DNA from: Ginkgo biloba | Lineage: Eukaryota > Plantae > Ginkgophyta | Direction of reading: 5' to 3' | Assembly (NCBI GenBank): GCA_024626585.2 | Contig: JANKJI020000004.1 | Coordinates: forward strand, 66,392,927-66,411,944 | DNA length: 19,018 bases | Part shown: positions 1-19,018 of the stretch, in pieces | Layout of the letters: every line of letters starts with the position of its first letter | How positions within the stretch are numbered: position 1 is the first letter of the stretch | Translations under genes and position numbers: made by a program | Notes under the pieces: generated by a model | What the model was told of the DNA's origin: nothing | The model's input: the letters and a program-made list of their open reading frames with translations, nothing else | The model's database searches: none

Positions 1-1301
1 TACAAGAAGATATATCAAGGTCAGGGGAGAACAGGAATACACTGGCAGAAAGTAAGCACCATATGCTAGCATCAAGAGAGATCTAGAGATAATGGCAGTA
101 GATTAGCACCACCTGCTAGGACAATCATGAGTAAGAAAATTGAGGAGAAACGAGCCAAGGGGCTCTGTTTCAAATACAACAATAAATGGTCCATATGGGT
201 CACAAGTGCTTCGAGAAATAATTATTCATCATCAAGGACACTTATGAGGAAGAAACTAAGGAGGAGATAGTCAGAAGACCCTCAGATAGAAGAAGACGAG
301 AATGTAGTTATCGTCTCCATGCATGCACTAGCAGGTATTGTCACTCCCAAAACACTCAAAATTGAGGGGTATATCAAGAAGCAAAGAATTGTGGCCCTCA
401 GTAACTTTGGAAGTACTCATAATTTCATCAACAAAAAGTTAGCAGAGAATTTGAATTGTTTTCCATATCCGATCAAAAACTTTCAAGTAATGATAGCCAA
501 GGGATCCATCACATGTGGTGGAAGGTGCCACAATATCAAGCTAAGCATGGGGGAATATAAATTATCCACTAATATGTATGTCATACCTATGGGAGGAGTT
601 GATGACGTTTTAGGCATCTAGTGGCTCAAGACACTTGGTACATTCTCTATGAACTTGGAAGAACTTTTTATTAGGTTTAAGGTTGAAGGAATCAAGTATC
701 AGTTGCAAGGATTATTGGCACCACCCACTCAGCTAACCAGCTCCCATAGGATAGAAAAGTTGATTAAAAGGGGCAGGTGGGATCATTGCCAGGTGTTATG
801 CCATCATCGCAACAAAAACCCCTAATAGCATGGACACCGACATGGAAGAGATAATCCAGAAACATAGGTAAGTGTTTGAAGTGCTACCCAAGCAACTTCC
901 CCTTTGAAAGGGAACAGGACCATGCCATTGAGCTAGTCGCACGAAGTAATCCCCTGAACATCAGGACTTACAAATATTCGTACCACCAAAAGAGTGAAAT
1001 TGAAATGTTGGTTCAAGAACTTTTGGAGGAAAGAGNNNNNNNNNNNNNNNNNNNNNNNNNNNNNNNNNNNNNNNNNNNNNAAGAATGATGGATCTTTCTC
1101 AATGTATGTGGACTACCAGGAATTAAATGGCATCACAATCAAAGATGAATTCCCATTTCCTATCATTGATGACTTATTGGATGACTTAACAAGAGCAGTG
1201 TTCTTACCAGATTGGACCTAAAATTCATATATCATTAGAGTTGGATCAAGACTGAAGATGCTCATAAAATTGCCTTCAAAACACATGACGGGCACTATGA
1301 G
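1..1301 (+). mobile_element. Degenerate Ty3/gypsy (chromovirus-like) gag-pol fragment: gag C-terminus, aspartic protease, N-terminal half of RT
   Basis: KRAKGLCFKYNNKW..HKC knuckle (~150-210). SMHALAG..PKTLKIEGYIKK..ALSNFGSTHNFI...GVDDVLG is a retropepsin with decayed DSG (319-621). DHAIEL..NIRTYKY and KNDGSFSMYVDYQELNGITIKDEFPFPIIDDLLDDL...AFKTHDGHYE are RT motifs. Stops and frameshifts are present. Confidence 0.93.
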
Positions 1302-2379
1302 TNNNNNNNNNNNNNNNNNNNNNNNNNNNNNNNNNNNNNNNNNNNNNNNNNNNNNNNNNNNNNNNNNNNNNNNNNNNNNNNNNNNNNNNNNNNNNNNNNN
1401 NNGACTTATAAGTTATTTTGGGTTTTTCTTAAATGAATATCAAATTTATCAATCATTCACAAAGGGGGGCAATTATCATACATGCATGGGGGCACACGGT
1501 CCTAGGAGGTTACAGCATCAAAATAGGTCACGATCTAGTATAAACAATAACACTGCATACAAAGCAGAACATTTGGTTATATACACAAGAGTGCCCACAA
1601 AGGGAATAGATAGACTACATTATTGAATGTGCATGCTTGTCAAATGTAGTGGTGACTTGTTCTTTTGGTTCCAAATAAGAGTTGTTTATAGTTGTATTGC
1701 ACTCTCCTTCATAGTTCTAAATCAGCCACAAGGTCCCACCATTCGTTTTCCAAAAATTCAACTTTTTGCCAAGGCAGGATCAAATTGAACTTCTTTCTAT
1801 AATAACACTTGTCATACATGCAAGGAAACATGCTTACATTGCATGCTGTGGCTTTCCTGCTCTTATGATCTTAGTAATCAAGAAGCTCTGAAATAAAGTA
1901 GAATTAAAACTCCCTTCACAGAGCATGATTGCGAATATTCGAAATATGATCTTATAATACATAAATTGTCAAAATCAACCGAGGTCCTAAGCAAGCAAAT
2001 GAAAAATTTTAAATCATTAAAAACTGCCTGGATCTCTGAACTAATTTGTCTGCCTCGATATCACGTGCAATACTAAAACACCATGCCTGACCATGTATCT
2101 CTTAGAAAATTATGTCTGAAAAGCTTCTCAGACAAAAAAGTCTCTACCACTGTGAGAGATGGATTCAGTTGGCTAGTTGGAAGGAAGCACATGTTAAGGT
2201 TGAAAATGAGAGAGATCAAAAGATGAGGANNNNNNNNNNNNNNNNNNNNNNNNNNNNNNNAAAGAAAGGGTACTATCTCATGCCAACATTTATATGAAAG
2301 AGAAAAAATATATTTCATTTACAGTGAATTCTACTTAACAAAGCCCATCAAATGATTTGTCTGGGCTGAAACTTTCCTC

Positions 2380-2535
2380 TTAATCATCTCCTGTCAATGC
2401 ATCTCTTAAAGTTTGTAGAAAAAGTTCTGAAGAATTTCCCTGGGCTTCAAACCTTTCCAAGACCTCCTGCCTTATGTAGACTGCATCAGCCCCAGCTAGT
2501 CGCATTTCTAGAGCTTCTTGTTGTGAAGAGACACC
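2380..2535 (-). CDS. IGPS-like gene, last coding exon (51 aa + TAA)
   Basis: Minus strand tctctgttgatgctcAG|GGT GTC TCT...GAT GAT TAA. Contains the TIM-barrel alpha7-beta8 signature GVSS..EA..M..AGADAV.I. Confidence 0.85.
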   Translation of the reverse strand, partial: GVSSQQEALEMRLAGADAVYIRQEVLERFEAQGNSSELFLQTLRDALTGDD

Positions 2536-5500
2536 CTGAGCATCAACAGAGAGATGATCTGAGCATGCAGCTAAAGGAAAACAAATGCTTCATTATACAA
2601 CATTAAGAAAATGAACTTGGGAGTTCAAAAAGAAATTGAAACAAACAATTAATATAAATAACAGAATTTGTAAACTGGGTAAAATAGACTCAAGTGCGTG
2701 CTCACAAATATTTTCACACATTACAAATTTACAAGTCTTTATAATCTATATTTCAGAAAATGGAATAATAAACTTACCACAATAGAATATGTACCAAAAG
2801 GTACCTGCCCTATCAGACTTTTGGCAATGTCCTTCCTAAAACCTGGGATAGGTAACTGCAAATGCAAAGAGAAACTTCGTGAACAGTAAAAATGTAAACC
2901 CTTAACATACTTGTGATAGACAGACAACATGCACAGAATATACACAGTATGACTTGTAGGTATTGCCAGTCACTACTCACAATCAAACAAGTCTATCTTG
3001 TGGGCAACAAGAAAATACTTTTGTTTAAAATAACCCATACAGAATGCAGCCATGAATATAAATGCACTGCTTATTTCCTTCAATATGCACCAAACTTGGG
3101 ACATTCCAGAGTGATTAATACAGTCATGATTGAAACAGCGTAAGCAACTTAGCCTTGTTAAGCATAACCACTCTCCATGCTAATGTTACTTCTCTGTTGA
3201 TGAAGACAGGCAATAATATGGCATTTCTTTTAAAGCTTCATACAGCTCAATTACAATCATAATGTGAGAGAATCCAATCCTCGTTGAAGAGTATCTGCAA
3301 TACCAATTTGCTCCACTAACAATAAAAAAATCTCAACCTCAAATATACAATAGCTTTGAGATATTTAAGTAAATTCTTCACAACAGATTCCTAGTTAAAA
3401 TAATTCATTGGTAGAAAATCATTCGCAACCAAAAACAACTCTTACAAAATTCCGTTCTTGACTTGGATTGTTGTATAGACTTGGATTGTGATATAGAATA
3501 CTTTCCTTTGGTATTGCTTGGTCCTCAATTGAGTATTTGTAGATAACCAGCTCAACTCCTGATTTGGTTGATTACTTTCCATGGATATAGTAGGCTTCTC
3601 CTTTGGTCCCTCTTTGTTGTAGATATGTAGAGTTTTGGATCATTTATTCTTCTTTGTCCATCAATTTTCTTCTGTATGTCCCTTAACTTTGGAGAAAGGA
3701 CAAAAAGCTTTAGGATCATAACCTCTCAATCCTTTTGGAGATTTTGGTTGAGACAGACCTTCCAGGATTTAGCCACTTTGAGAAGGCCAGCTTCCTAGAA
3801 TGAACAATAGTTTACACCCCAAATAAATATATTGATTGATTGATCAATGANNNNNNNNNNNNNNNNNNNNNNNNNNNNNNNNNNNNNNNNNNNNNNNNNN
3901 NNNNNNNNNNNNNNNNNNNNNNNNNNNNNNNNTCTAACTGGGTCCATAACAAATCCCCCATTCTTAAAATGCTTTGCCCTCAAAGCATTGACAAGGTGAG
4001 TGTTGTGTCCAACAAGATTCTTTTTCCCAAGATGTGTCTGATAGCTGACATGCATTTGAAAAATTGCATTTTTCCTTTTGTATTGAATTGACAAGTGAAG
4101 GATCTGCCTAGCGATCTATTTTATTTGGTGATAATGTGGATGAAGATACAGCCTGCCATCTGTAGAGATTTTTCCAATTCTCCTATTGTTACTTCAAATA
4201 CACACTTCAACCATGGCTGGTTATATCATCTAGGCAGTTTTCAAGGGCAAAATATTGTGCAACTGTTCCAAGGCCATTTTTGTTAAACAATTTCTCTAAT
4301 TTGTGCATTGTCACGAGTTGCAATCGAGGTGATTTTGAACCTGTGAGTTTGTATAGTGTATTCTTCCAATGGAATTTGAGAAAACATTTCTTCAGGTTCA
4401 TTTTGAAAGTTCCTAGTGTTTCTAACCATTGTGTGCCAAGAACTACATTTATGCCACCAAATGTCATAGCATACATAGGAGTTTGATGTCAGAAGTCTCC
4501 CATTGTTAACTCGATCATATAGCACTTTAGTTCCTCCAACTGCTACGATCACTTGTAATTGCGTTGTCTATGAATTGGTTTAATTGCTAAGCTAAATGTT
4601 TATCCATAAAATTATGGNNNNNNNNNNNNNNNNNNNNNNNNNNNNNNNNNNNNNNNNNNNNNNNNNNNNNNNNNNNNNNNNNNNNNNNNNNNNNNNNNNN
4701 NNNNNNNNNNNNNNNNNAGGTGACTATTGTGCCCAATGATATTCTTTTTTTTTTTTTTTTTCCCATAGACAATGCAAGTTTGTAAAGTTACTTTTTCTTT
4801 TTATACTAAGTTCATAAGTGGAGGACTTGTTAGGCAATCATTATATGTTATTTTTATGATAGTGTAGATGACAATATGGCTTGCCATGTGTGGGAACTTC
4901 TCTTGTTGTTACTTCTAAGATATGCTTCATACATGGCTAGTTTATATCATCTAAATATTTTTCAAGAGTAAAGCATCAAGCGATAGTTTCAAGGTCATTA
5001 TTATTAAATATTTTCTCTAATATATATGCTATCTTGAGTTGAGATGGAGGCGCTTCTAACCCCATGAGTTTGTATGATGTACACTCCCAATACAATTAAA
5101 GAAAATTTTTCTTCAAGTTCATTTTGAATGTTCCCAACATTTCCACCCATTGTGCCCCAAGGACTACATCAACACCACCTAATGCCATAGCAAACATAGG
5201 AGTTTGAAGTCGAAATTCTCCCATTGTTAAATAGACCTTATGGCATTTCCCTTCAAATGATGTAGGTCCTCCATCTTCTACCATCACTTGAAATTGCATT
5301 GTTGGGTATATGAATTGGTTTAATCACTGAGCTAAATGCTTATTGATAAAATCATGGGTGCTTCCACTGCCAATAAGGACAAAAAACTTCGCCTACTTAA
5401 TGTAACCTTGTATTCTTAATGTCTTCAGTTGGGTTAAGCCAGTTACTGCAACTAAGGATACTATTGGAATAGGTTCATTATCTTGACTCTCCTTAGTTGA

Positions 5501-8500
5501 CAATTCATTTGTCATCTTCGTCATTATCATTGCCATCATCATGGTCAATTTTCTTTCTTCTTCTACCTGATCCTTATCTTCCAACTTATAAAAGTATAAT
5601 TTCTTGTCCTGACATTGATGTCCTTTCTGGTATTTCTTATTGCATTTGTAACATGTGCCTTTGGCACTATGTTCTTGCGTTTTTCGTTGTTCGTTAATTT
5701 TTGACATACTGCAATCTCTAAATGGTCATTATTTGCCTACATAACTAATGTCAGGTATGTATAAGGTCTTTTTCGCCAACCTTGTGTTGATATTTTCATC
5801 TCAGCTTAATGTGCTTTTCATATAGCTTGTTGAATATTACAAATGTCATGCATTTTAACCTCGTTATGAATGTCTTAGTTCAACCCACCAATGTATGAAT
5901 CTAACAAATTTTGTTTAAGATTATTATGTACGTGAGTCGCTAGTGATTCCCATTGATCTGTGTACTCGTCCACAGGTCCTTTTTGTTTTAGCCATGTTAT
6001 TGATTGAATAAGTCATTCTCTCATGTGTTTTTGTATTTTTTGAAGTCAATGAACGAATGTTTCCCATGTTACCATAATCGAACTCAATTCCTCGGACCAC
6101 CATAGGAACCAATCGTAAGTTGTTGCATCTAATTGCAGTGCAACTATATTAATTCGCTCTTTAGTTGTAAATGATGGGTTAAGTTTAAAACTTTAAAATA
6201 ATGTTCTAGTTTGCTAACCCAATTTCTTGCCTCTTTCCTATTTTCATTGTTGAATTTTTGCAATTCCATCTTAACATTGATCATGGCTATTCTCAAATTA
6301 TACAGTGGGCTTGTTTGTTGCAGCAATTGTGGACTAGTTATGAATCCCTGTCCATCAAGTTGAATTTGAAGTTGCAATAACTTAATGAAGTCACTGATCT
6401 CATCTAGCCTAGTGTGTATTTTCATCACCTCCTTCATTACTTGATATATTCTTGTTTCCATATGCCATACACTCTGACTTAGATTTGTGTTTGTTCCATT
6501 TTTGCTCAAGCAGTCCCTATTTACATAACTACGCTCAATGGGTCCAATCAAATTAATGTTCCTTAGCCTAAGACATTTTTATAAAACAAAAATTAACCTT
6601 TTAATTAAATTTACAATATTCTTTTAACTACAAATATTCTTATATAAATTTGAATTCAAAACCATTAGAAAAGAAAAGAAATATTTACAAACACAATTGG
6701 ATCATTCATGATTGTGAAAATGATTTTTAGAACAGACCAAGATGCAACAGAATCACGATGAGATGGTGGAAGAATAAACAAAGCAATGAAAAGAGAGAGA
6801 TGGCTTCGAAAGAATGACTGGGTTGCCATAAACCTTTAGACGTAGAAGAGATTTGTTTTGGCATTTTTTGCGAACAGATTGATGGATAAGAGTTGAACCG
6901 ACCATGTGGAGTGAGGCAAGAAAAAGAAAAAATAGATTAGGCATTATCACTAGTAAGAGGATGGGGAACAACATTGGGACAATGGGCAGAAGTTTACTGC
7001 GGACAGAAGGGTAGATGCAAATGAAGGATTCATTGGGAGGAAAGATGCAAATGATGGGATGACAAAGAACACCAAGCAAGCAAACAAAAGAGATGTCGAC
7101 GAGAGAATGAAAGAGACAAGAGGAACCAATGGATGTATTATAGACAAACGATGTTAGTCTAATGACAATGCAAAACCACTAGGGAATATATTGAAGGAAG
7201 TCAATGAATGGAGTCGAAGGCAGAGAACAAGAACAGATAATAGAGACAAAGGACTACGAAATGAGAACCAGGAATTGATGACAAGGCATAACAAGAGGAG
7301 TCAAGCCGATTGGTAGAATCGGCACTATGATACAACTTGAGACGAACCTTCTAGGGACTTGGCCGCTTCAAGAAGGCTAGTCTCCTAAAATGAACAATAG
7401 TTTACACCAAAAATAAAGGCACTGAATGATTGAAAGATGAATGACAATGTTTCATATGATTTGATATCTAAATGCTCTATTCATGTCTATTCTATAGGGT
7501 TATGATCATTCAATAAATAATTAATTTTCTAATTGGGTCCACAAACTTGGCCTTGGCTAGACTTGTTTTCCTTTGTTGTTTGCCTCTTTCAATGTAATCT
7601 TGGGTTTGTCCCTAGCCTTCACTTCGAGTGCAAATTTGTAGGCTTTATCCAAACTGTTAATCTCAAATAGCCCAAACCATTGTTAAATGTTTGTGTAGAG
7701 TTGTCCTACAAATTTCAATAGCATTTTGACTTCTGCTTCTTGGGCAATTAATTCGATCTACATGTTGTCGAACGCATCTACATATTCCTCCATAGTTTGC
7801 CCTCTTGCTTGAGGTGTTGCCACTTTGTCTAGAGTTCATTCAAGTAGCCTAGTGGAGAAAACTCTCCCTAAGAAAGCCCTTGAATTACTAAAATGTCATC
7901 ACAGGTTGAATGTTTGGTTGATTTAGGTAGTATGCCCACATCAATCATGCACAAGCAATTTTTTACCAGTCACTACAACCTTAAGAATCATCGCAAGCCT
8001 CCCATGCAGGAAAATTCAATTTTCCACATCATTTCGCTATGTCATATGATTCAATCTCCAACTTTGTGTTCACCTTGATTACTCCAAATCTGAAGTGAAT
8101 CCAAAGCCCTTTGTAATGGATTTATTCGTTGAAGAGGTTGTGGAGTCAACGATTGCATGGTAGCTTGCATTTGTTGTAGAAGAATCTAATTTTGTTGGCC
8201 CACAATGTCAAACTTAATGCTATAGCTTTTGTCCACCAAGATCAGTGCATAATGTCATTTTAGCAGGGGTTCCCCAAACATGAGCTAAACTTGCAAACCT
8301 CAATGGTACTATGTCTTGGTCTCCATTCATCTATGCATGCATGGTTTCAAGTTTATTCAGCCTTGTCTCCATAGTGTCCTCTGCAGATGGAATTGTAAAT
8401 CTATATCCTTTGGACTCTCTTATAGTAGCAACTCTTCTTGCTTTTAGTAAAGCGATTTCCCTTGAGGTAAAGCCTACTTTCTTGTGGTCCTCTTTGGACC

Positions 8501-11500
8501 AAACCATCAACAAGGTTGCATACAAGAAAACTTCAAGATAAACATATATGCATGGAAAATTATTAATTTCTAATTTCTATAGAAGTCATTTCCAATATTA
8601 ATACTTATGAACTTTGCCTCCTTACATATATTGGAATTTGATCGAAATGCAAACAAATTTTCTTATCTTTACTTAATCAATTTAGTTACTTCATTCTTCT
8701 ACTGTATTTTATTCTTGGCTCTTTCTGATCACCTTACTTCTTTTACTGACCTACTAGGCAATTAATGAAACCAATGGGGTGGTTTAACAATAACAACAAA
8801 CTTTATACAATCGGGCTTAGGAAATCAATGTTGTCATCGAGTTCTCCCAAGACCTCAGTAGACATGCTATGCCAATGGCGTCAGTGGGTCCCCCATAATA
8901 ATGGGCGCTACAGCCTACCAAATGATGAGGTAATAAAATATCTAACTAGCATCCAAGATACACAATAAAATAACCAACAGTCTCGAGCTCTCATTGATTC
9001 CATCAATAAATAGAATTTAGTACATAATACAAATATATATAACGTTGTGTGGAAATCTAGACAACAACTTAATAACAATCCGTTTTCATAGAAATATCAA
9101 AANNNNNNNNNNNNNNNNNNNNNNNNNNNNNNNNNNNNNNNNNNNNNNNNNNNNNNNNNNNNNNNNNNNNNNNNNNNNNNNNNNNNNNNNNNNNNNNNNN
9201 NNGACTAGTCACATTAGAACAAAATATGATTTAAACAATATTAAACTCCTAAGTTTTGAATTTTTTTTTCAAAAAGGGGGTCGCAGCCTACGCGCTCAAT
9301 TCTCCACGATTCTACATTTTTTTGATCGAACAACCCCACAATTCAAATATATTGCTCAGCTTTGACTTTCATCGTTGAGCGACTGCGTACTCATAGTTGT
9401 TTGCAATCGCTTAGACTCTTGAACTTGACGTGGCATCTTCCTTTCGATTGTCTCCTGACAACTCATTCTCTTGCGCGACTCTGCTCTTCACCAACTGCGA
9501 CTCTTCAGCAAATCCCTAGCATCTCTCACCCTCCACCAGCACATTTTTCTTCTCACAGCTTTGTCTCTTTTATGAACGACAATGTTTCTAAGCAAATCTT
9601 TTGTGCATTCATCGAAGAGCGGTGTTTACTCACTATCTTTCTTCTTCTTTGAGGGTTTCCAGAGGTTTTTGGTATGTATCTTCTGCTACACATGTCACGT
9701 GGATTTCTCTCTTCGTCTTTTCTCTCATCCGCGCCTACAAATCAGCATCCTCCTCCAAAATCGTGTGATTCTCTTTCTTCGTGGCTTCTCAATGCCCTAG
9801 CATTCTTCCCAAACACATTTTCTTTGTCTCCCTAGCACAGTAACTCATGCCCTAGGGTTTCGGCTACCTGCAACGACGTGTTCACATCCTTAGGGCATTG
9901 TAACAAATCTGAACTAGGGTTTTTGTCCCCATTCGTTACGTTCTCCACTTACTCAAGGATTTATCCCGAATGCAAACAATTCTCTTTGAATCCTCTCAAG
10001 TCTGGATGACTCCTTTTCAAGACTCCATCTCTGATATCAAATGTGAAAACCAAGATCAAGATTCAAAAGCAAACACAATACGTACACTAAAGAATTCGAG
10101 TAGAATTGGTCTACGATTTTTTTTAATTTTTAATATCTCTCAATCTGATGATAACACAATGGGTACGGAGATCTACTTAAAGACTTAGCTCCCAAATAAC
10201 TTCCTTAGGAAGTTGTGATTAATTCACATAATTAATACAAGTATTAATTATTTACATTTACACTTTGGGACATAAGTGTACAACAAATAAAATACTANNN
10301 NNNNNNNNNNNNNNNNNNNNNNNNNNNNNNNNNNNNNNNNNNNNNNNNNNNNNNNNNNNNNNNNNNNNNNNNNNNNNNNNNNNNNNNNNNNNNNNNNNNN
10401 NNNNNNNNNNNNNNNNNNNNNNNNNNNNNNNNNNNNNNNNNNNNNNNNNNNNNNNNNNNNNNNNNNNNNNNNNNNNNNNNNNNNNNNNNNNNNNNNNNNN
10501 NNNNNNNNNNNNNNNNNNNNNNNNNNNNNNNNNNNNNNNNNNNNNNNNNNNNNNNNNNNNNNNNNNNNNNNNNNNNNNNNNNNNNNNNNNNNNNNNNNNN
10601 NNNNNNNNNNNNNNNNNNNNNNNNNNNNNNNNNNNNNNNNNNNNNNNNNNNNNNNNNNNNNNNNNNNNNNNNNNNNNNNNNNNNNNNNNNNNNNNNNNNN
10701 NNNNNNNNNNNNNNNNNNNNNNNNNNNNNNNNNNNNNNNNNNNNNNNNNNNNNNNNNNNNNNNNNNNNNNNNNNNNNNNNNNNNNNNNNNNNNNNNNNNN
10801 NNNNNNNNACCCAAATGATGTGTTGATAGAAGTCTTTGATTGCTGAGTTCAAAATTTCAAAGTTTCTTCAAGCCAAGATATGATATATCATGCAAATACT
10901 ATGCATTATTCCATTTTACTATGCTATATGTGGACACATACATCACATGACGCAAGATCATAGAACCTCGCAACACAAGTGCATATTATAGAGACACTAA
11001 TGTGTACACTGATTTCATGGCTCCCTGCTCTTCTATCCCCTCTCAAGAATATGATAATATCCAACAACTTGGTGTCCTACAACTCCGTCTATCCACTTCA
11101 TCCTTAACTGTGCAAGATGAAGAAGATACTCTTGGTTGAATTCATAAGTCTACAATTTTGTGCAAAGTTTGCTTACAGGTCTTTGATCTGTGTTTGTCAT
11201 TGCCATGTCAATCCTATCTAGAGTCTATGCTAGTTAGAGAATTTATAATCATCCAATGCAAGGAAGGTGAAAGCTTGCAGTTCATTTAGCAGACAAGTTT
11301 CTACTTTTACGGAAAAGCACAAGATGCTTCATTTAAGGGGAGAAAACATAAACCTTCTCTCAATCAGCAAGAGGGCTGTGACAAAAGTATCCAAAAGCTT
11401 CAAGAAGGTAGAATAACCTCCTCAAAATGAAAAACAATCTTTCAAAAAGCTAAATTGGGCAAACATACTTTCAAAGCTTTTCCAGATTAAATTATTTTTC

Positions 11501-14469
11501 CTGCTCGGCACCTGTTTCCTTCACAGTGTGGAAATGTTATTTAAATCTTTTATAATGTGCGTTATTGTTTTGGGCCTTTGATTTAGTTCCTTCACTGGGG
11601 GATTTTAGAATTCTGTCCAAAACTCTATCTGCAGGAAAAGGGACTGCACTCCNNNNNNNNNNNNNNNNNNNNNNNNNNNNNNNNNNNNNNNTACAGTGCA
11701 TTCTCTACTGTGCACATTTCAGAATTGCACCTATGTCAACTGTAGTAAAACTGAATTCAGTCTTTGTAGGCAGCTTTTAGAACCTGCCCAAAATGTCTTC
11801 TACACTATTCAGTATTGCTCTTGCACTTGGCTTTATATTTGCCTTTTCTTATAGCCAAATTTTGTCAAAAAATGGCATATCATTTTTCCATAAAGGTTCT
11901 CTTTCTTTAGATACTACAAAAGCTTTTGTGAATGCCCGTGTTCTTTCTTAAAGACAGTCACAAATTCTTCCAAATAAGATCCAGAAATATTATTCATCAG
12001 CCCCATAAAACTTGTTCAAGCATTAGTTAGAACCAAAGGCTTTAGCAGGAATTCATAGAACCCATCTCTTCGAATGGTATCTTTGAAACATTTACTTCAT
12101 GGATGGAAATTGGTAGCCACTCAAACTAATTGTAGAAAACAGTGTCTCTCCACATATAATCCAAAAATTCATAAAAACAGAGAGGGTATTTGTATTTACC
12201 TATTACCGTGTTCAATAATCTATAGTCCCCGCACATCCTCACAGTGTCATCNNNNNNNNNNNNNNNNNNNNNNNNNNNNNNNNNNNNNNNNNNNNNNNNN
12301 NNNNNNNNNNNNNNNNNNNNNNNNNNNNNNNNNNNNNNNNNNNNNNNNNNNNNNNNNNNNNNNNNNNNNNNNNNNNNNNNNNNNNNNNNNNNNNNNNNNN
12401 NNNNNNNNNNNNNNNNNNNNNNNNNNNNNNNNNNNNNNNNNNNNNNNNNNNNNNNNNNNNNNNNNNNNNNNNNNNNNNNNNNNNNNNNNNNNNNNNNNNN
12501 NNNNNNNNNNNNNNNNNNNNNNNNNNNNNNNNNNNNNNNNNNNNNNNNNNNNNNNNNNNNNNNNNNNNNNNNNNNNNNNNNNNNNNNNNNNNNNNNNNNN
12601 NNNNNNNNNNNNNNNNNNNNNNNNNNNNNNNNNNNNNNNNNNNNNNNNNNNNNNNNNNNNNNNNNNNNNNNNNNNNNNNNNNNNNNNNNNNNNNNNNNNN
12701 NNNNNNNNNNNNNNNNNNNNNNNNNNNNNNNNNNNNNNNNNNNNNNNNNNNNNNNNNNNNNNNNNNNNNNNNNNNNNNNNNNNNNNNNNNNNNNNNNNNN
12801 NNNNNNNNNNNNNNNNNNNNNNNNNNNNNNNNNNNNNNNNNNNNNNNNNNNNNNNNNNNNNNNNNNNNNNNNNNNNNNNNNNNNNNNNNNNNNNNNNNNN
12901 NNNNNNNNNNNNNNNNNNNNNNNNNNNNNNNNNNNNNNNNNNNNNNNNNNNNNNNNNNGTTTTTGACAGAAAAACGACATTGCAAGCATCAATGGATTTC
13001 CAAACTACTCTTTTTAATTGTGTGGCAAAATCAAAAGGGATGCTTTATCACTCAGGGTCACCATATAATTGCAATCTTCCTCAATGATTATCTTACTTGA
13101 TTTTCCCCTACATTCATTAGAACCATTTTTAATTTCATACTCTCAATTTCCTTCAGTCAGTATCTCTTCCACAAAAGCTTGTTCTTCTCCTTTATGACAA
13201 GAATGTTTCACATCCTTTGTTTTTCGTCAGAAGGTTTTTACCTCTTTCTTCTCACATGCCTCCTTTATACTCTCCTGAATTCACTCATTTTGGACTAGGA
13301 TCATTTCATATGATTCATGGTTCTCTATTTGCAAGTCATTCAACAGAAATTAAAGTTTCTAACACTAACCCAACATGATATCCTTCTAGATTATGAATTT
13401 ATGACCTTGGGAATTCGGATGTTTCTGAAGTACCACTTTGGAGTTATGGATACTCAACAACCCCCCTAAATTCATTAAAACCATCATTAATTTCATACTC
13501 TCAATTTCCTTTAGTTGGTATCTCTTCTACAAAAGCTTGTTCATCTCCTTTACGACAAGAATGTTTAACCCCCTTTTTGTTTGGGGTAGGTTTTCACCTC
13601 TTTCTTCCCACGTGCCTCCTAAAACTAACCCAGCATGATATCCTTCTAGATTATGACCTTAGGAATTCAGATGTTTCTGAAGTACTACCTTGGAGTTATG
13701 GATACTCAACAACCCCCCAATACATACATACATATAGATAGATAGATACGCATACGCGCACACACACACACACACTCTAATAGTACACCTCATCCCCTTA
13801 CTGTTGTGTACTGAAACATCATATCTATATTTTGCATTCTATATTCTAAAGCCTTCAAAATGCATTATGTTTTCTTCTGATCTACTATGTATACCCATGT
13901 CAGAGATTGATACACTATTATGTACTCATTTTACTTGTGACATTGACCACTTTTGGTCATTTTGGGCATCAAGATAAGTCTTTTCTTGCACATGCATGCA
14001 AGCATGCACACAAAAGGACAACAATTTCTTTTAACTAAATCCAAGGCAGGAAAGCTTAAATCTTACAATGAGCACTCCTTTTCTTCTCAAATGAAGCAAG
14101 AAGGAAGGTAAAAGACTAGAGAGGATACGTACAGAAAGCCCAACAGACAAATTGATGCCATAAGCAGAAACCCCCATAGCCTGGACCTCTTGCAGTTCTT
14201 TCAGGTTGATAATCTGCACCCATAAGACTCACATTTTAATATGAGAACTTTGGCAGAAAGATGGAATTAAAATTGAAAAAATTTTGAAAAGTTGGCTAGA
14301 ATTATTTGCAAGACAATACACTATTGGATTTCAGCCATCTCAAATGAACTCTAATAACTTTTGCTGAAGTGTATTCAACACCACTGAAATGTTGAAAGGA
14401 AAGATAAACTAACCTCAACAATAGCATCCAATCCTAGAGATAGTGTGTACTTTAAAATAGCAGGCGCTC
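2380..14469 (-). CDS. Spliced host gene (3' part; 5' exons outside the window or masked) encoding a divergent indole-3-glycerol phosphate synthase-like (TrpC-fold, beta/alpha barrel) protein; join(14414..14469,14133..14213,2778..2855,2380..2535)
   Basis: Four exons with canonical AG acceptors (GT donors on the first three) and matching phases translate without stops to (G)APAILKYTLSLGLDAIVE|IINLKELQEVQAMGVSAYGINLSVGLS|LPIPGFRKDIAKSLIGQVPFGTYSIV|GVSSQQEALEMRLAGADAVYIRQEVLERFEAQGNSSELFLQTLRDALTGDD*. Motif order and spacing match the IGPS consensus LGMEALVEVH..EL..A...GA.LIGINNR......L...IP....V.ESGI.T..D...L..AGADAVLVGE.L. The family assignment is by eye, not by search. Confidence 0.85.
2778..2855 (-). 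CDS. IGPS-like gene, exon (78 nt)
   Basis: Minus strand ttctctttgcatttgcAG|TTA CCT...ATT GTG|GTaagt, phase 0/0. Encodes LPIPGFRKDIAKSLIGQVPFGTYSIV (alpha6-beta7). Confidence 0.85.
3370..3748 (-). mobile_element. Older Ty3/gypsy element, gag 3' part (zinc knuckle) and start of protease
   Basis: CPFSKVKGHTEEN*W at 3661-3702 is a decayed CX2CX4HX4C. Downstream VFYITIQV (with a small tandem duplication at ~3460-3496) resembles the pre-DSG strand of the protease. Confidence 0.65.
3749..3951 (-). repeat. 3' LTR of the 3.8 kb element
   Basis: TG...CA bounded (tgagacagacc...ggtccataaca). Shares e.g. 'aatgaacaatagtttacacc' and 'tctaa.tgggtcca' with 7338-7546. Partly masked. Confidence 0.88.
3954..3965 (-). 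promoter_or_regulatory. Polypurine tract
   Basis: Minus strand AAGAATGGGGGA lies 2 nt before the TG of the 3' LTR. It is preceded by ttgagggcaaagcattttaag, resembling the LEDK-type pol terminus of chromoviruses. Confidence 0.7.
4150..4770 (-). pseudogene. Retropepsin protease, copy 2 (tandem duplicate)
   Basis: ISLGTIVT..[masked]..HNFMDKHLA...MYAMTFGGINVVLGTQWLETLGTFKMNLKK. Nucleotide match to copy 1 at an offset of ~730-740 (e.g. 4571-4617 vs 5311-5357). Confidence 0.9.
4878..5480 (-). pseudogene. Retropepsin protease, copy 1
   Basis: VSLVAVTG..KTLRIQGYIK..FVLIGSGSTHDFINKHLA...FQVMVEDGG...GGVDVVLGAQWVEMLG. Confidence 0.9.
5480..6551 (-). pseudogene. Decayed gag of the 3.8 kb element
   Basis: KMELQKFN....RNWVSKLEHYF (capsid N-terminus), G.VDEY (~5960-5980), and the KGTCYKCNKKYQKGHQC knuckle at 5612-5653. 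Frameshifts and stops are present. Confidence 0.85.
7324..7335 (-). promoter_or_regulatory. Degenerate tRNA-iMet primer binding site
   Basis: Minus strand TTGTATCATAGT lies 2 nt inside the 5' LTR boundary and matches canonical TGGTATCAGAGC at 9/12 positions. Confidence 0.65.
7338..7546 (-). repeat. 5' LTR of the 3.8 kb element
   Basis: tgagacgaacc...aattgggtccacaaac is a diverged direct repeat of 3749-3951. The right-hand terminus is mutated, so the end is uncertain by 1-2 nt. Confidence 0.85.
7547..8400 (-). mobile_element. Older Ty3/gypsy element, gag 5' part (interrupted by the 3.8 kb element)
   Basis: YLNEL*TKWQHLKQ..GQTMEEYVDAF...LKFVGQL...SLDKAYKFA is a retrotrans-gag-like pattern. 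Heavily decayed; the left boundary is set by the TSD and the right boundary is approximate. Confidence 0.75.
11050..12251 (-). mobile_element. Highly degenerate Ty3/gypsy pol relic (RT clear at ~11940-12251; downstream part only tentatively pol-derived)
   Basis: DDTVRMCGDYRLLN.VIGKYKYPL ... DGFYEFLLKPLVLTNA*TSFMGLMNNI.GSYLEEFVTVF is a decayed version of the gypsy RT motifs DG..RMC.DYR.LN / GHYEFLVMPFGLTNAP.TFM.LMN. Confidence 0.75.
13104..13718. repeat. Imperfect tandem duplication (unit ~360 bp; second copy has a ~100 bp internal deletion)
   Basis: 13104-13264 matches 13463-13620 (taatttcatactctcaatttcc...acaaaagcttgttc...tgcctcct), and 13361-13467 matches 13621-13718 (actaaccca.catgatatccttctagattatga...ggagttatggatactcaacaacccccc). 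Confidence 0.9.
13720..13775. repeat. Compound microsatellite (TACA)n(TAGA)n..(CA)n
   Basis: tacatacatacatatagatagatagatacgcatacgcgcacacacacacacacac. Confidence 0.9.
14133..14213 (-). CDS. IGPS-like gene, exon (81 nt)
   Basis: Minus strand gggtgcAG|ATT ATC AAC...CTT TCT|GTacgt, phase 0/0. Encodes IINLKELQEVQAMGVSAYGINLSVGLS (alpha5-beta6 'GIN' motif). A 200 nt intron separates it from the upstream exon. Confidence 0.85.
14414..14469 (-). CDS. IGPS-like gene, most 5' exon visible (56 nt)
   Basis: Minus strand aaattttcAG|GA GCG CCT...GTT GAG|GTtagt. Encodes (G)APAILKYTLSLGLDAIVE, equivalent to IGPS alpha4-beta5 LG[M/L]xxLVE. Confidence 0.85.
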
Positions 14470-16679: not shown

Positions 16680-19018
16680 CTAATCCTGGATGGACCATGT
16701 CTCGTGCATCCATTCTCTCCCTAATAGAACGGGTTATGTTTTTCCTCGTCTGACATTTTTTAAATTGTGAAATCTTGTGATACCGTCACGCTAGCTAGAG
16801 TGGGTGGGACATTTTCCATGTTTCTTAATGTTCTAACTTTTGATTGGTCAACCATTGTTAATGTGTAATGGGTTGACTTCATTGTTGGACTACCAATTGC
16901 TTTCCGCGTGTTTTCTGGGAGAACACTTACTGCAAACCCTCCTCAATGGTCGTATTATTTATTCGATCTTCCTCGGAGTTACACAGTAACTTGTGGATCT
17001 TTATCTAGATCAAGTTGTAATCGTCATATTGGAATGTTTTCCTTTCTTTCTTTTGATGTGTTTGGGTCCCATACGTGAAAGATTTTGGACAAAGTGATGC
17101 TCAATTGTAGCTCATTGGCTAATCGTTTCAACAACTCAACTCCTGGTCATCAATCTAGATGGATGGAGTAGTTGTAGTTGAGTTGTCATTGGAAGTTACC
17201 TCCAATTTTGCTTCCTCCTATTGTAGGATGGAGGCCTGCTTGGGGTTTTTTTGTACATACACTTTGGTGACTTTTTGTTTATTTTTACTCTGCTCAACTT
17301 CTTCTTATGCTTTTTTTGCACGCAATTGTTCTACTTCTTCTAATTTACAAGCTTCTTCTTTCCTTGCCTTTGCTTCACAATTAGCAACCTCTAGTGTTGC
17401 TTTGGCTTCCAAAAATAGGTCCTTTTCGTCATTTGGATTTAGAAAGTCGATGTCAAGTTATGTTGATATTGTCTTCTTTCCTGATCGTGTACATATGTTC
17501 ACATCAAACGATTTGCTAGTATCCAAAGTTCAACTCANNNNNNNNNNNNNNNNNNNNNNNNNNNNNNNNNNNNCCTCTCTTGGGACAATTTTCTGAATCG
17601 TGGTCTCCAAGACTACAATTCTTCAATAACATTCCACCATTATTCTGCATGTAAGGGCAGTCTCGAGAGATGTGCCCCCATTCTAAACATCTCATTCATC
17701 AAACTAGAGGTGGACAATTTCGATTAGTTCCTCTGTATGGATTATTTTGTCAATTTCGTAGAATGGAATAATAATCCTTTGTATTGTGCATATCCTTTTC
17801 AAATATTTAAATACTAAATCTTTGCACTATTACCTTCATTATTCGTGGATTTTGGTTCCTTGTCATTTTCTTATTTTCCTTCATTGTGTTTTCTCGTTTA
17901 GTTTCTTATTTTTCCAATTTTAACTTTGCTATCTCAACTCGCAACATTTCTATTTCAGCTTTTTCTTTTTACTTGGGCAGGGCTCTGTTAGCATTCCAAC
18001 ATGCTGCATAGTCTACTGTGAAGTCTTCCAGTTGCCATTGATGAGAATGTTGCTATGGGGCGTCCATGCACATTTGTCTTTCAAATTCCATTGCCAAGTT
18101 TCGTACTTGTTCACAGCTCTCTATTGGGTGGTGTTTAATTTTTCCCTAATATGGAGGGAGTAATCCATCCATGAAGTAATTCATCATTACGATTGGCAGG
18201 ACAGTATGTGGACCCTCGAGCTTTGATACAAGTACTTGAAGTCTTCCGTCATAGTTATGGATTGTCTCGTCANNNNNNNNNNNNNNNNNNNNNNNNNATA
18301 GATTGTGGACGGGTCTCAAAGGTTTAGGAAGTAGTCCAAAAACAACTCCTGTATCACTACCCATGAATGATGCTTCACACATTGATACCATTGTAATGCT
18401 TGCCCTCGTAATGTAGAGAAGAACTTTCATTTAATATTTTCTTCATTTATCACTTGTTTTTGGCGTATGTTATTTAGGAACAAAGCGAGGTGTTTTGCAG
18501 GGTCATTGTAACCTTCATACACTAGATGGGGCAACGAATTGTTTGCAGTGACATAAATTTGGGTGGTGCCCTTATTTCCTACACATGGACAGTGCTGACA
18601 TCCCCTACCTGGCATATAAACTTGGCCACCATTGTTGTATCGGTTATTTCTGTAATTATTATTGAAGTTACCACCCCCATTGTTTAAAGTTCCCACTACT
18701 ATTATTGAATTTACCACCATTGTTGTCAAAATTACCCCCATTGTAGTTGAAATTACTGTCGCCATTGTTGAAATTACCACTACTATTGTTGTGATTACCA
18801 CTAAAGATATTATTATGACTACCATAATTGTTATTATTGCAAAATACATTGCTATGATTGTATCCTCGGTAATCTTGTAGTTAGTCATTTAAAATGTTGT
18901 TGTGATTGTAATTGCATGGGTTATTCTTGTTGCTATTGTTGCTAAAGGCATTGTTGTAATTATAACTATCCACGTTATTGTTGTTGCCATTGTTACTAAA
19001 GACATTGTAGTTGTTCCC
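16680..19018 (-). mobile_element. Degenerate Ty3/gypsy (non-chromovirus-like) gag-protease region
   Basis: YEGYNDPAKHL and DETIHNYDGRL...NYFMDGL are gag motifs. *MRCLEWGHISRDC is a knuckle at 17657-17698, followed by a K/E-rich linker at ~17200-17420. The retropepsin NTTIEEG.AVSVLPE.T.KAIG.P......LTMVDQ......LGREW lies at ~16680-16970. Confidence 0.85.
18625..19018 (-). repeat. Asn/Gly-rich low-complexity region with imperfect ~21 bp repeats at the 5' end of gag
   Basis: Recurrent accattgttgaa(a/t)ttaccac units; the minus strand encodes NNGGNF-like repeats (NNGGGNFNNNYRNNRYNNGGQ). Confidence 0.75.

What the first reader, a model, noticed from the sequence alone, without database searches (positions are those of the whole stretch)
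2380..14469. Hidden spliced gene for a TrpC/IGPS-fold protein with a remodelled active site (candidate pseudoenzyme or new-function paralogue)
Seen: four small exons join in frame, with no stops or frameshifts, to give 122 aa, while every surrounding TE frame is riddled with lesions; this contrast suggests purifying selection. Established: IGPS (Sulfolobus solfataricus numbering) uses E159 (LVE), N180/R182 (GINxR), E210-S211-G212 (ESG) and G233-S234 for catalysis and phosphate binding. In my manual alignment the E159 (DAIVE) and N180 (YGIN) equivalents are kept. R182 becomes S (GINLS), ESG becomes IVG (no general-base Glu, no Ser), G233 becomes R (VYIRQE), and the beta6-alpha6 loop is a longer Pro/Gly-rich segment (VGLSLPIPGF). 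Inference: this is not the housekeeping plant IGPS but a distinct barrel that probably cannot turn over CdRP. It may bind another ligand or act as a regulatory/scaffold partner, for example of Trp/indole pathway enzymes.
Basis: partly seen in the sequence, partly recalled or inferred. Interest (0 to 1): 0.8.

Follow-up and report, generated by a model that had tools for sequence, protein, structure and literature searches.

The report
Inactivated tryptophan-enzyme relative in non-flowering plants
This is a real, expressed gymnosperm gene for an unstudied relative of a tryptophan-making enzyme that has lost the residues needed for that reaction, yet is kept in conifers, clubmosses, mosses, liverworts and apparently green algae (none was found in flowering plants), so it probably does a different, unknown job in the chloroplast.

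Summary
Observation confirmed. Four minus-strand exons (14469-14414, 14213-14133, 2855-2778, 2535-2380) encode the last 122 aa of an IGPS/TrpC-fold protein. RNA joins E2-E3 (over the 11.3-kb intron holding all six gaps) and E3-E4. dN/dS versus Cryptomeria is 0.26; intron positions match Cryptomeria, Selaginella and Sphagnum. Orthologues occur in gymnosperms (77-79% identical), a lycophyte, mosses, liverworts and alga-like contigs; none was found in angiosperms. They form one long-stemmed clade (100/100) apart from bacterial TrpC. An AlphaFold model of the Araucaria orthologue matches IGPS (Z 29.6). Every member lacks K53, F89, R182, E210-S211 (two-residue deletion) and G233; gymnosperms also lack K110. 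E51, E159 and N180 remain, with a new W-x-x-H-P motif and a C-terminal GDD. So this is old remodelling, not decay, and CdRP turnover is very unlikely, although databases label several members IGPS. Best reading: a plastid pseudoenzyme/adaptor (0.5); rival: a new-substrate enzyme (0.3). No paper on the family was found. Analogues: Plasmodium AMR1 and plant SKL1. A link to Trp-pathway partners is untested.

The parts
14414..14469 (-). Exon E1 (internal; alpha4-beta5; ends with the E159-equivalent Glu, DAIVE). Upstream exons are not in the readable part of the window.
   Evidence: AG/GT ends; 14/18 identical to Araucaria P0005 residues 191-208; same boundaries in Cryptomeria, Selaginella, Sphagnum; profile hit E 1e-6
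14214..14413 (-). Intron E1-E2, 200 nt, GT-AG, phase 0
   Evidence: sequence; conserved position; not covered by reads
14133..14213 (-). Exon E2 (alpha5-beta6; N180 kept, no R182; start of the longer beta6-alpha6 loop)
   Evidence: its 3' end is the loose end of reads at 2855
2856..14132 (-). Intron E2-E3, about 11.3 kb including six assembly gaps and retrotransposon remains; GT-AG, phase 0
   Evidence: RNA joins 14133 to 2855; the same intron is 40.2 kb in Cryptomeria, 66 nt in Selaginella, 323 nt in Sphagnum
2778..2855 (-). Exon E3 (Pro/Gly loop, alpha6, beta7)
   Evidence: RNA depth and both joints; 21/26 identical to Araucaria and Cryptomeria
2536..2777 (-). Intron E3-E4, 242 nt, GT-AG, phase 0; falls where E210-S211 are deleted
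   Evidence: joint seen in 4 runs; alga-like members that have no intron here show the same deletion
2380..2535 (-). Exon E4, coding part (G212, alpha7, beta8 with G233 to R, alpha8, invariant C-terminal GDD, TAA stop)
   Evidence: 41/51 identical to Araucaria, E 1e-26 pairwise
2261..2379 (-). 3' UTR (at least this far; transcript contigs run past the tested stretch)
   Evidence: continuous RNA depth and contigs

Best explanation
The gene is the gymnosperm member of an old green-lineage family that arose by duplication or acquisition of an IGPS (TrpC) gene and then gave up the IGPS reaction. Shown here: spliced and expressed, under purifying selection, complete IGPS-type (beta/alpha)8 barrel in orthologues, loss of the IGPS catalytic and phosphate-binding set, one clade whose branching follows plant phylogeny. 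Inferred: the protein is imported into the plastid (orthologues carry an acid-poor, Ser/Thr/Arg-rich N-terminal extension) and works there as a pseudoenzyme, that is a ligand-binding or adaptor subunit. It uses newly conserved surfaces (beta3 loop W-x-x-H-P-x-Q, the Pro/Gly beta6 loop with alpha6, alpha7 and the terminal GDD) to bind a partner protein, and a residual E51/E159/N180/W112 pocket that is structural or holds a small non-phosphorylated ligand. Most likely role: an accessory factor of plastid development or photosynthetic upkeep that flowering plants dropped, in the manner of SKL1 (dead shikimate kinase) and Plasmodium AMR1. The partner and the process are not identified.
For: RNA joints. 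dN/dS 0.256, bootstrap 0.16-0.40; differences by codon position 28/12/36. Orthologues in Welwitschia, Araucaria, Cryptomeria, Selaginella, Sphagnum, Physcomitrium, Marchantia, Riccia, Calypogeia and intron-bearing alga-like contigs. Fold: pLDDT 86.9, best matches all IGPS, TM 0.78, Z 29.6. K53, F89, K110, R182, S211, G233 are invariant in 37 of 37 bacterial TrpC; K53, F89, R182, S211, G233 are lost in 11 of 11 land-plant members, and position 110 drifts among K, R, S, A, T. K53, K110, E159, N180 are essential for IGPS (PMC7681013). The catalytic loops beta1, beta2, beta8 are less conserved in the family than in TrpC (0.51/0.52/0.50 vs 0.59/0.65/0.57), while alpha6, alpha7 and the C-terminus are much more conserved (0.70/0.60/0.77 vs 0.37/0.31/0.02). 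N-terminal extensions have 0-5% Asp+Glu in 8 of 9 orthologues. Precedents: PMC6380595, PMC12203367.
Against: E51, E159, N180 and a new W112/H115 set are nearly invariant at the catalytic face from algae to conifers, which also fits a new enzyme. No localisation, interaction or mutant data exist; plastid targeting is read from composition only, and the Selaginella and Cryptomeria extensions are short (17 and 27 aa). The 5' exons of this gene are not in the window, so its own K53/K110 and transit peptide were inferred from orthologues. The TrpC comparison set is bacterial and more divergent overall, which inflates the contrast outside the loops.
Confidence: 0.5

Rival explanations
1. A new enzyme: the barrel keeps a working site with E51/E159 as acid-base or metal ligands plus N180, W112 and H115, and acts on a different, probably non-phosphorylated or differently anchored plastid metabolite; the Lys/Arg that replaces G233 may supply the positive charge lost with K53 and R182.
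For: E51, E159, N180 (one algal Thr), W112, H115, P116 and Q118 equivalents are invariant across land plants and alga-like members; K/R at 233 in 10 of 11 land-plant members and here. AMR1 loss perturbs isoprenoid intermediates and was read as possibly enzymatic (PMC8022201).
Against: The central Lys110 position is free to vary (K, R, S, A, T) and the beta1 and beta2 loops are eroded in gymnosperms, with deletions in Cryptomeria; new invariants include surface features away from the pocket (terminal GDD).
Confidence: 0.3
2. A regulator of the tryptophan pathway itself: it binds canonical IGPS, TSA or an anthranilate/indole-type ligand and tunes or channels flux.
For: IGPS origin and probable plastid location; plant IGPS proteins interact with indole-forming enzymes (10.1101/2021.01.04.425338); an aromatic residue is kept at position 112.
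Against: F89 of the anthranilate pocket is lost. No angiosperm member was found although the Trp pathway is universal in plants. AMR1 is kept in parasites that lost Trp synthesis, showing IGPS-like proteins need not serve that pathway.
Confidence: 0.12
3. A still-active, divergent IGPS isoform, as the UniRef and JGI names imply.
For: Best Pfam family PF00218 (E 5e-26 for the Welwitschia orthologue); database names; K110, E51, E159, N180 all remain in most bryophyte and lycophyte members.
Against: K53 and the phosphate site (R182, S211, G233) are gone in all; K110 is gone in gymnosperms; the Araucaria member's best NCBIfam TrpC score is 92 bits against cut-offs of 258 and above.
Confidence: 0.05
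4. A decaying duplicate or pseudogene.
For: Loss of catalytic residues; isoforms that skip or lose exons in Welwitschia and Cryptomeria.
Against: Expressed and correctly spliced; dN/dS 0.26; same substitutions and introns kept across land plants.
Confidence: 0.03

Closest known systems
Indole-3-glycerol phosphate synthase, TrpC/IGPS (PF00218, EC 4.1.1.48)
   Same: Same (beta/alpha)8 barrel with N-terminal helices (Z 29.6, rmsd 2.6 A over 245 residues to M. tuberculosis IGPS 3t40); E51, D111, E159, N180, G212 kept; about 25% identity.
   Different: K53, F89, R182, E210-S211, G233 lost in all members, K110 lost in gymnosperms; beta6 loop 3 residues longer; terminal GDD; separate clade on a long stem.
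Plasmodium AMR1 (PF3D7_1363700) and Vitrella IGPS-like proteins (PMC6380595)
   Same: IGPS-fold, catalytic residues not conserved, plastid-associated, kept beside or without canonical IGPS; AMR1 does not complement trpC and is needed for apicoplast biogenesis.
   Different: AMR1 is 790 aa with large extensions and was reported as apicomplexan-specific (PMC3637116); no alveolate sequence came up in my searches. Orthology was not testable here.
Shikimate kinase-like 1, SKL1 (PMC12203367, PMC2593004)
   Same: Same evolutionary pattern: an aromatic-amino-acid pathway enzyme duplicate that lost its reaction and is conserved from liverworts onward, needed for chloroplast biogenesis.
   Different: Unrelated fold; SKL1 is land-plant specific and present in angiosperms, whereas this family seems to reach into algae and was not found in angiosperms.
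Flavodiiron proteins (distribution analogue, PMC12344627)
   Same: Plastid proteins of algae, bryophytes and gymnosperms that angiosperms lost.
   Different: No sequence or functional link; only the pattern of retention resembles.

Membership tests
IGPS/TrpC homologous family (PF00218) | Profile match above the curated cut-off | tested here: met
   Full-length orthologue P0001: 91.8 bits, cut-off 27. The four exons alone give no Pfam hit.
IGPS/TrpC homologous family (PF00218) | IGPS-type (beta/alpha)8 barrel | tested here: met
   Model of the Araucaria orthologue (80% identical over E4); all top matches IGPS or IGPS-derived designs
Functional IGPS (EC 4.1.1.48) | NCBIfam TrpC equivalog cut-off | tested here: not met
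   Araucaria member: best 91.9 bits against cut-off 260; below every TrpC model's cut-off
Functional IGPS (EC 4.1.1.48) | Lys53 | tested here: not met
   A/E/D/Q in 11 of 11 land-plant orthologues, K in 37 of 37 TrpC; this gene's own 5' exon is not in the window
Functional IGPS (EC 4.1.1.48) | Lys110 (catalytic acid) | tested here: not met
   S, A, A, T in the four gymnosperm orthologues; K or R in the others; own residue not in the window
Functional IGPS (EC 4.1.1.48) | Glu51, Glu159, Asn180 | tested here: met
   E159 and N180 in the window's exons; E51 in all orthologues
Functional IGPS (EC 4.1.1.48) | Phosphate site: Arg182, Ser211, Gly212, Gly233 | tested here: not met
   Only G212 kept; E210-S211 deleted, no Arg at 182, R at 233 in the window
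Functional IGPS (EC 4.1.1.48) | CdRP turnover / trpC complementation | not testable with these tools
   bench test
AMR1 / alveolate IGPS-like proteins | Common ancestry after the split from canonical IGPS | not testable with these tools
   No AMR1 sequence was returned by any search, and the published alignment is an image
AMR1 / alveolate IGPS-like proteins | Plastid location and need for plastid biogenesis | tested here: inconclusive
   Transit-peptide-like composition in orthologues only
Tryptophan synthase alpha / other phosphate-binding barrels | Best profile and fold match | tested here: not met
   E4 alone gave a weak TrpA hit (E 0.007), but full-length orthologues match TrpC at 1e-26 against 8e-4 for TrpA

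The most novel reading that the evidence does not exclude
The family is the green-lineage counterpart of Plasmodium AMR1: one ancient IGPS-derived plastid biogenesis factor shared by green plants and the malaria apicoplast and lost in flowering plants, so that moss and liverwort knockouts would give a tractable route to the unknown function of an essential parasite protein.
Probability: 0.12. Interest if true: 0.85.

Novelty: new variant of a known kind. Interest (0 to 1): 0.58.

Why it matters
It defines an undescribed protein family, conserved from alga-like eukaryotes to conifers, that databases either leave unnamed or mislabel as an active tryptophan enzyme. It seems absent from Arabidopsis and crops, which would explain why nobody has studied it, and it adds a candidate to the plastid functions that flowering plants gave up. 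It is directly testable, since Marchantia (Mp3g18290) and Physcomitrium have clear orthologues and easy knockouts. It is also a clean natural case of an IGPS barrel, the favourite scaffold of enzyme design, being repurposed, and may bear on the unsolved function of Plasmodium AMR1.

Tried and rejected
Exon-by-exon Pfam scan: blank. NCBIfam: only weak TrpA/PyrD hits for E4, rejected once full-length orthologues were available. PDB sequence search with E4: noise. Word search with E4: blank, as expected from its length limit. First fold job with 5 sequences failed (pLDDT 47). Bacterial genomes hold only canonical TrpC at 27-35%; viral contigs nothing; unnamed Atlas clusters nothing. Alternative acceptors for E4 (2570, 2558) are out of frame and not used by reads. 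Idea that the ES deletion is a splice-site artefact: rejected (RNA joint; same deletion in alga-like members without this intron). Idea that it is a subunit of the Chlamydomonas 2-MDa RNA polymerase: no mention of IGPS or a barrel. Paper searches by family terms and gene identifiers found nothing on the plant family.
Full report
Observation. The window is AT-rich plant-type DNA with many retrotransposon remains and 13 assembly gaps. On the minus strand four short exons have AG acceptors and, for the first three, GT donors: E1 14469..14414, E2 14213..14133, E3 2855..2778, E4 2535..2380 with TAA. They code 18+27+26+51 = 122 residues without a stop. Reads laid on 2261-3850 show depth only on E3, E4 and the 3' UTR, the 242-nt E3-E4 intron skipped in two raw RNA runs and two contig sets, and a loose end at 2855 whose letters are window 14133-14162, the end of E2. 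All six gaps flagged by the scan lie within that E2-E3 intron, so the frame does not depend on them. The stranded run has its first mates on the plus strand, as expected for a minus-strand RNA. Twenty listed runs from 11 studies hold the stretch or part of it; 14 are guessed to be RNA, most with the share of words a spliced transcript would give. Transcript contigs extend 562 nt upstream of E3, so about 425 nt more lie upstream of E1; no upstream exon is readable in the window.

Method limits. dN/dS pools codons aligned exon by exon.

Relatives. Pfam saw nothing in single exons, and the word search was blank. The exhaustive search with E4 gave four hits, the best a 295-aa Welwitschia protein at 67%. 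From it came full-length proteins of Araucaria, Cryptomeria and Selaginella, then Sphagnum, Physcomitrium, Marchantia (Mp3g18290), Riccia and Calypogeia. The four exons tile Araucaria residues 191-313 without gaps; summed identity is 96/122 to Araucaria, 94 to Cryptomeria, 78 to Welwitschia, 73 to Marchantia, 70 to Sphagnum, 62 to Selaginella. The genome is therefore a gymnosperm; an earlier scan note on this genome calls it ginkgo (s1-585802), which fits but which I did not prove. All four exon boundaries are the same in Cryptomeria, Selaginella and Sphagnum. Against Cryptomeria dS is 0.60, dN 0.15, dN/dS 0.256 (bootstrap 0.16-0.40; Fisher p 1e-7). Metagenome contigs of 52-71% GC carry more distant members (40-50% identity), two with clear GT-AG introns and one with a transit-peptide-like start; I take them for green algae, by inference only. 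No angiosperm or named fern protein appeared in either word search. Since liverworts were found at 44%, the absence of the many annotated angiosperms is meaningful, but only 8000 candidates were scored and named algae were missed too, so loss in angiosperms is likely, not shown. Bacterial genomes gave only ordinary TrpC.

Fold and tree. Orthologues pass the Pfam IGPS cut-off; the Araucaria member falls far below every NCBIfam TrpC equivalog cut-off. An AlphaFold model of the Araucaria barrel has pLDDT 86.9 (note that its alignment included bacterial TrpC rows); its best matches are IGPS structures (TM 0.78; Z 29.6, rmsd 2.6 A, 245 residues), and the Atlas's own independent model agrees (TM 0.82). 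In a tree of the C-terminal half, the 14 plant and alga-like rows form one group (100/100) separated from 37 bacterial TrpC by about 3.4 changes per site, with short inner branches that follow plant groups. No plant or cyanobacterial canonical IGPS was available to me, so the origin is open, and the presence of a canonical IGPS in this genome rests on general knowledge (PMC11439500).

Active site (S. solfataricus numbering, anchored on 1IGS; counts). Kept: E51, D111, E159, N180, G212. Lost in all 11 land-plant members though invariant in 37 of 37 TrpC: K53 (A/E/D/Q), F89 (S/T/D/N), R182, S211 (deleted with E210), G233 (K/R, once S). K110 is K or R in bryophytes, Selaginella and algae but S, A or T in gymnosperms. 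F112 is always W. K53, K110, E159 and N180 are essential for IGPS, and R182 matters for substrate binding (PMC7681013); E210 is not the base (PMC10591298). CdRP turnover is therefore very unlikely, above all in gymnosperms. New invariants shared with the alga-like members: the W-x-x-H-P-x-Q motif after beta3, a Gly before alpha4, an Asn after beta5, a Pro in the longer beta6 loop, P-F before beta7 and a terminal GDD followed at once by the stop. The old catalytic loops are less conserved in the family than in TrpC, while alpha6, alpha7 and the C-terminus are far more conserved. N-terminal extensions of 17-74 residues are poor in acidic residues, as plastid transit peptides are (composition only).

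How it most likely works. Shown: expression, splicing, constraint, fold, loss of the IGPS chemistry, great age. Inferred: plastid import, and a role as a non-catalytic, ligand-binding or adaptor subunit that uses the new conserved surfaces (0.5). The main rival is a new enzyme built on E51/E159/N180/W112/H115, with the Lys/Arg at 233 replacing lost charge (0.3). A regulator of Trp-pathway enzymes (0.12), a working IGPS (0.05) and decay (0.03) are less likely.

Comparison with what is known. It belongs to the IGPS homologous family but fails the tests for a functional IGPS. It works, by inference, like two described cases. Plasmodium AMR1 and two Vitrella proteins are IGPS-like and fail to complement trpC; AMR1 is needed for apicoplast biogenesis (PMC6380595; PMC8022201). 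SKL1 is an inactive shikimate kinase duplicate needed for chloroplast biogenesis from Marchantia to Arabidopsis (PMC12203367). Orthology with AMR1 could not be tested. Six paper searches by terms and identifiers found no description of the plant family; the library lacks most subscription journals. UniRef and JGI name several members indole-3-glycerol-phosphate synthase, RefSeq calls them uncharacterized.

Verdict. A real gene and an apparently undescribed, old family of IGPS-derived proteins with a remodelled site: a new variant of a known kind. Interest 0.58: not a new kind of system and no function in hand, but well supported, probably mis-annotated, and testable at once in Marchantia and Physcomitrium.

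Noticed in passing
window 2856-14132; L001 4107-44331: The same intron (E2-E3) is the giant one in both gymnosperms (11.3 kb here, 40.2 kb in Cryptomeria) while the neighbouring introns stay at 150-250 nt; it is 66 nt in Selaginella and 323 nt in Sphagnum.
   Followed up: partly
P0001 vs P0019; P0032, P0033: A Welwitschia isoform skips exactly E3 (26 aa) in frame, and two Cryptomeria isoforms end just after E3; both would break the barrel. P0005 (Araucaria) has one extra Gln at the E3-E4 joint, probably a tandem acceptor.
   Followed up: no
window 2298: All four RNA runs read C where the assembly has A (3' UTR): allele or assembly error.
   Followed up: no
window 2539-2689: One low-depth contig (depth 2, run X1) covers part of the last intron: retained intron, pre-mRNA or DNA.
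   Followed up: no
window 1-1300 (+) and about 4100-6550 (-): Broken Ty3/gypsy-type gag-pol remains; a weak aspartyl-protease hit at 319-618 (E 0.003). Two similar protease-region stretches at about 4200-4600 and 5050-5400 look like a local duplication, judged by eye.
   Followed up: partly
window 13100-13720: Two similar stretches in tandem, by eye a local duplication of a few hundred bases, followed by a short (TA/CA)n run near 13720-13780.
   Followed up: no
window 18657-18801: A 21-bp tandem repeat, 6.9 copies, inside an Asn/Thr-rich 153-aa minus-strand frame, probably part of a transposon.
   Followed up: no
P0044 / P0077 (Selaginella LOC9652196): A partial, degenerate copy of the same gene lies on the same Selaginella scaffold as LOC9652198.
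   Followed up: no
L040 645-1019 (P0003): A last exon of the family from an unidentified eukaryote (50% GC) has VG in place of the K/R-H/Q after beta8, so G233 may survive in some lineage.
   Followed up: no
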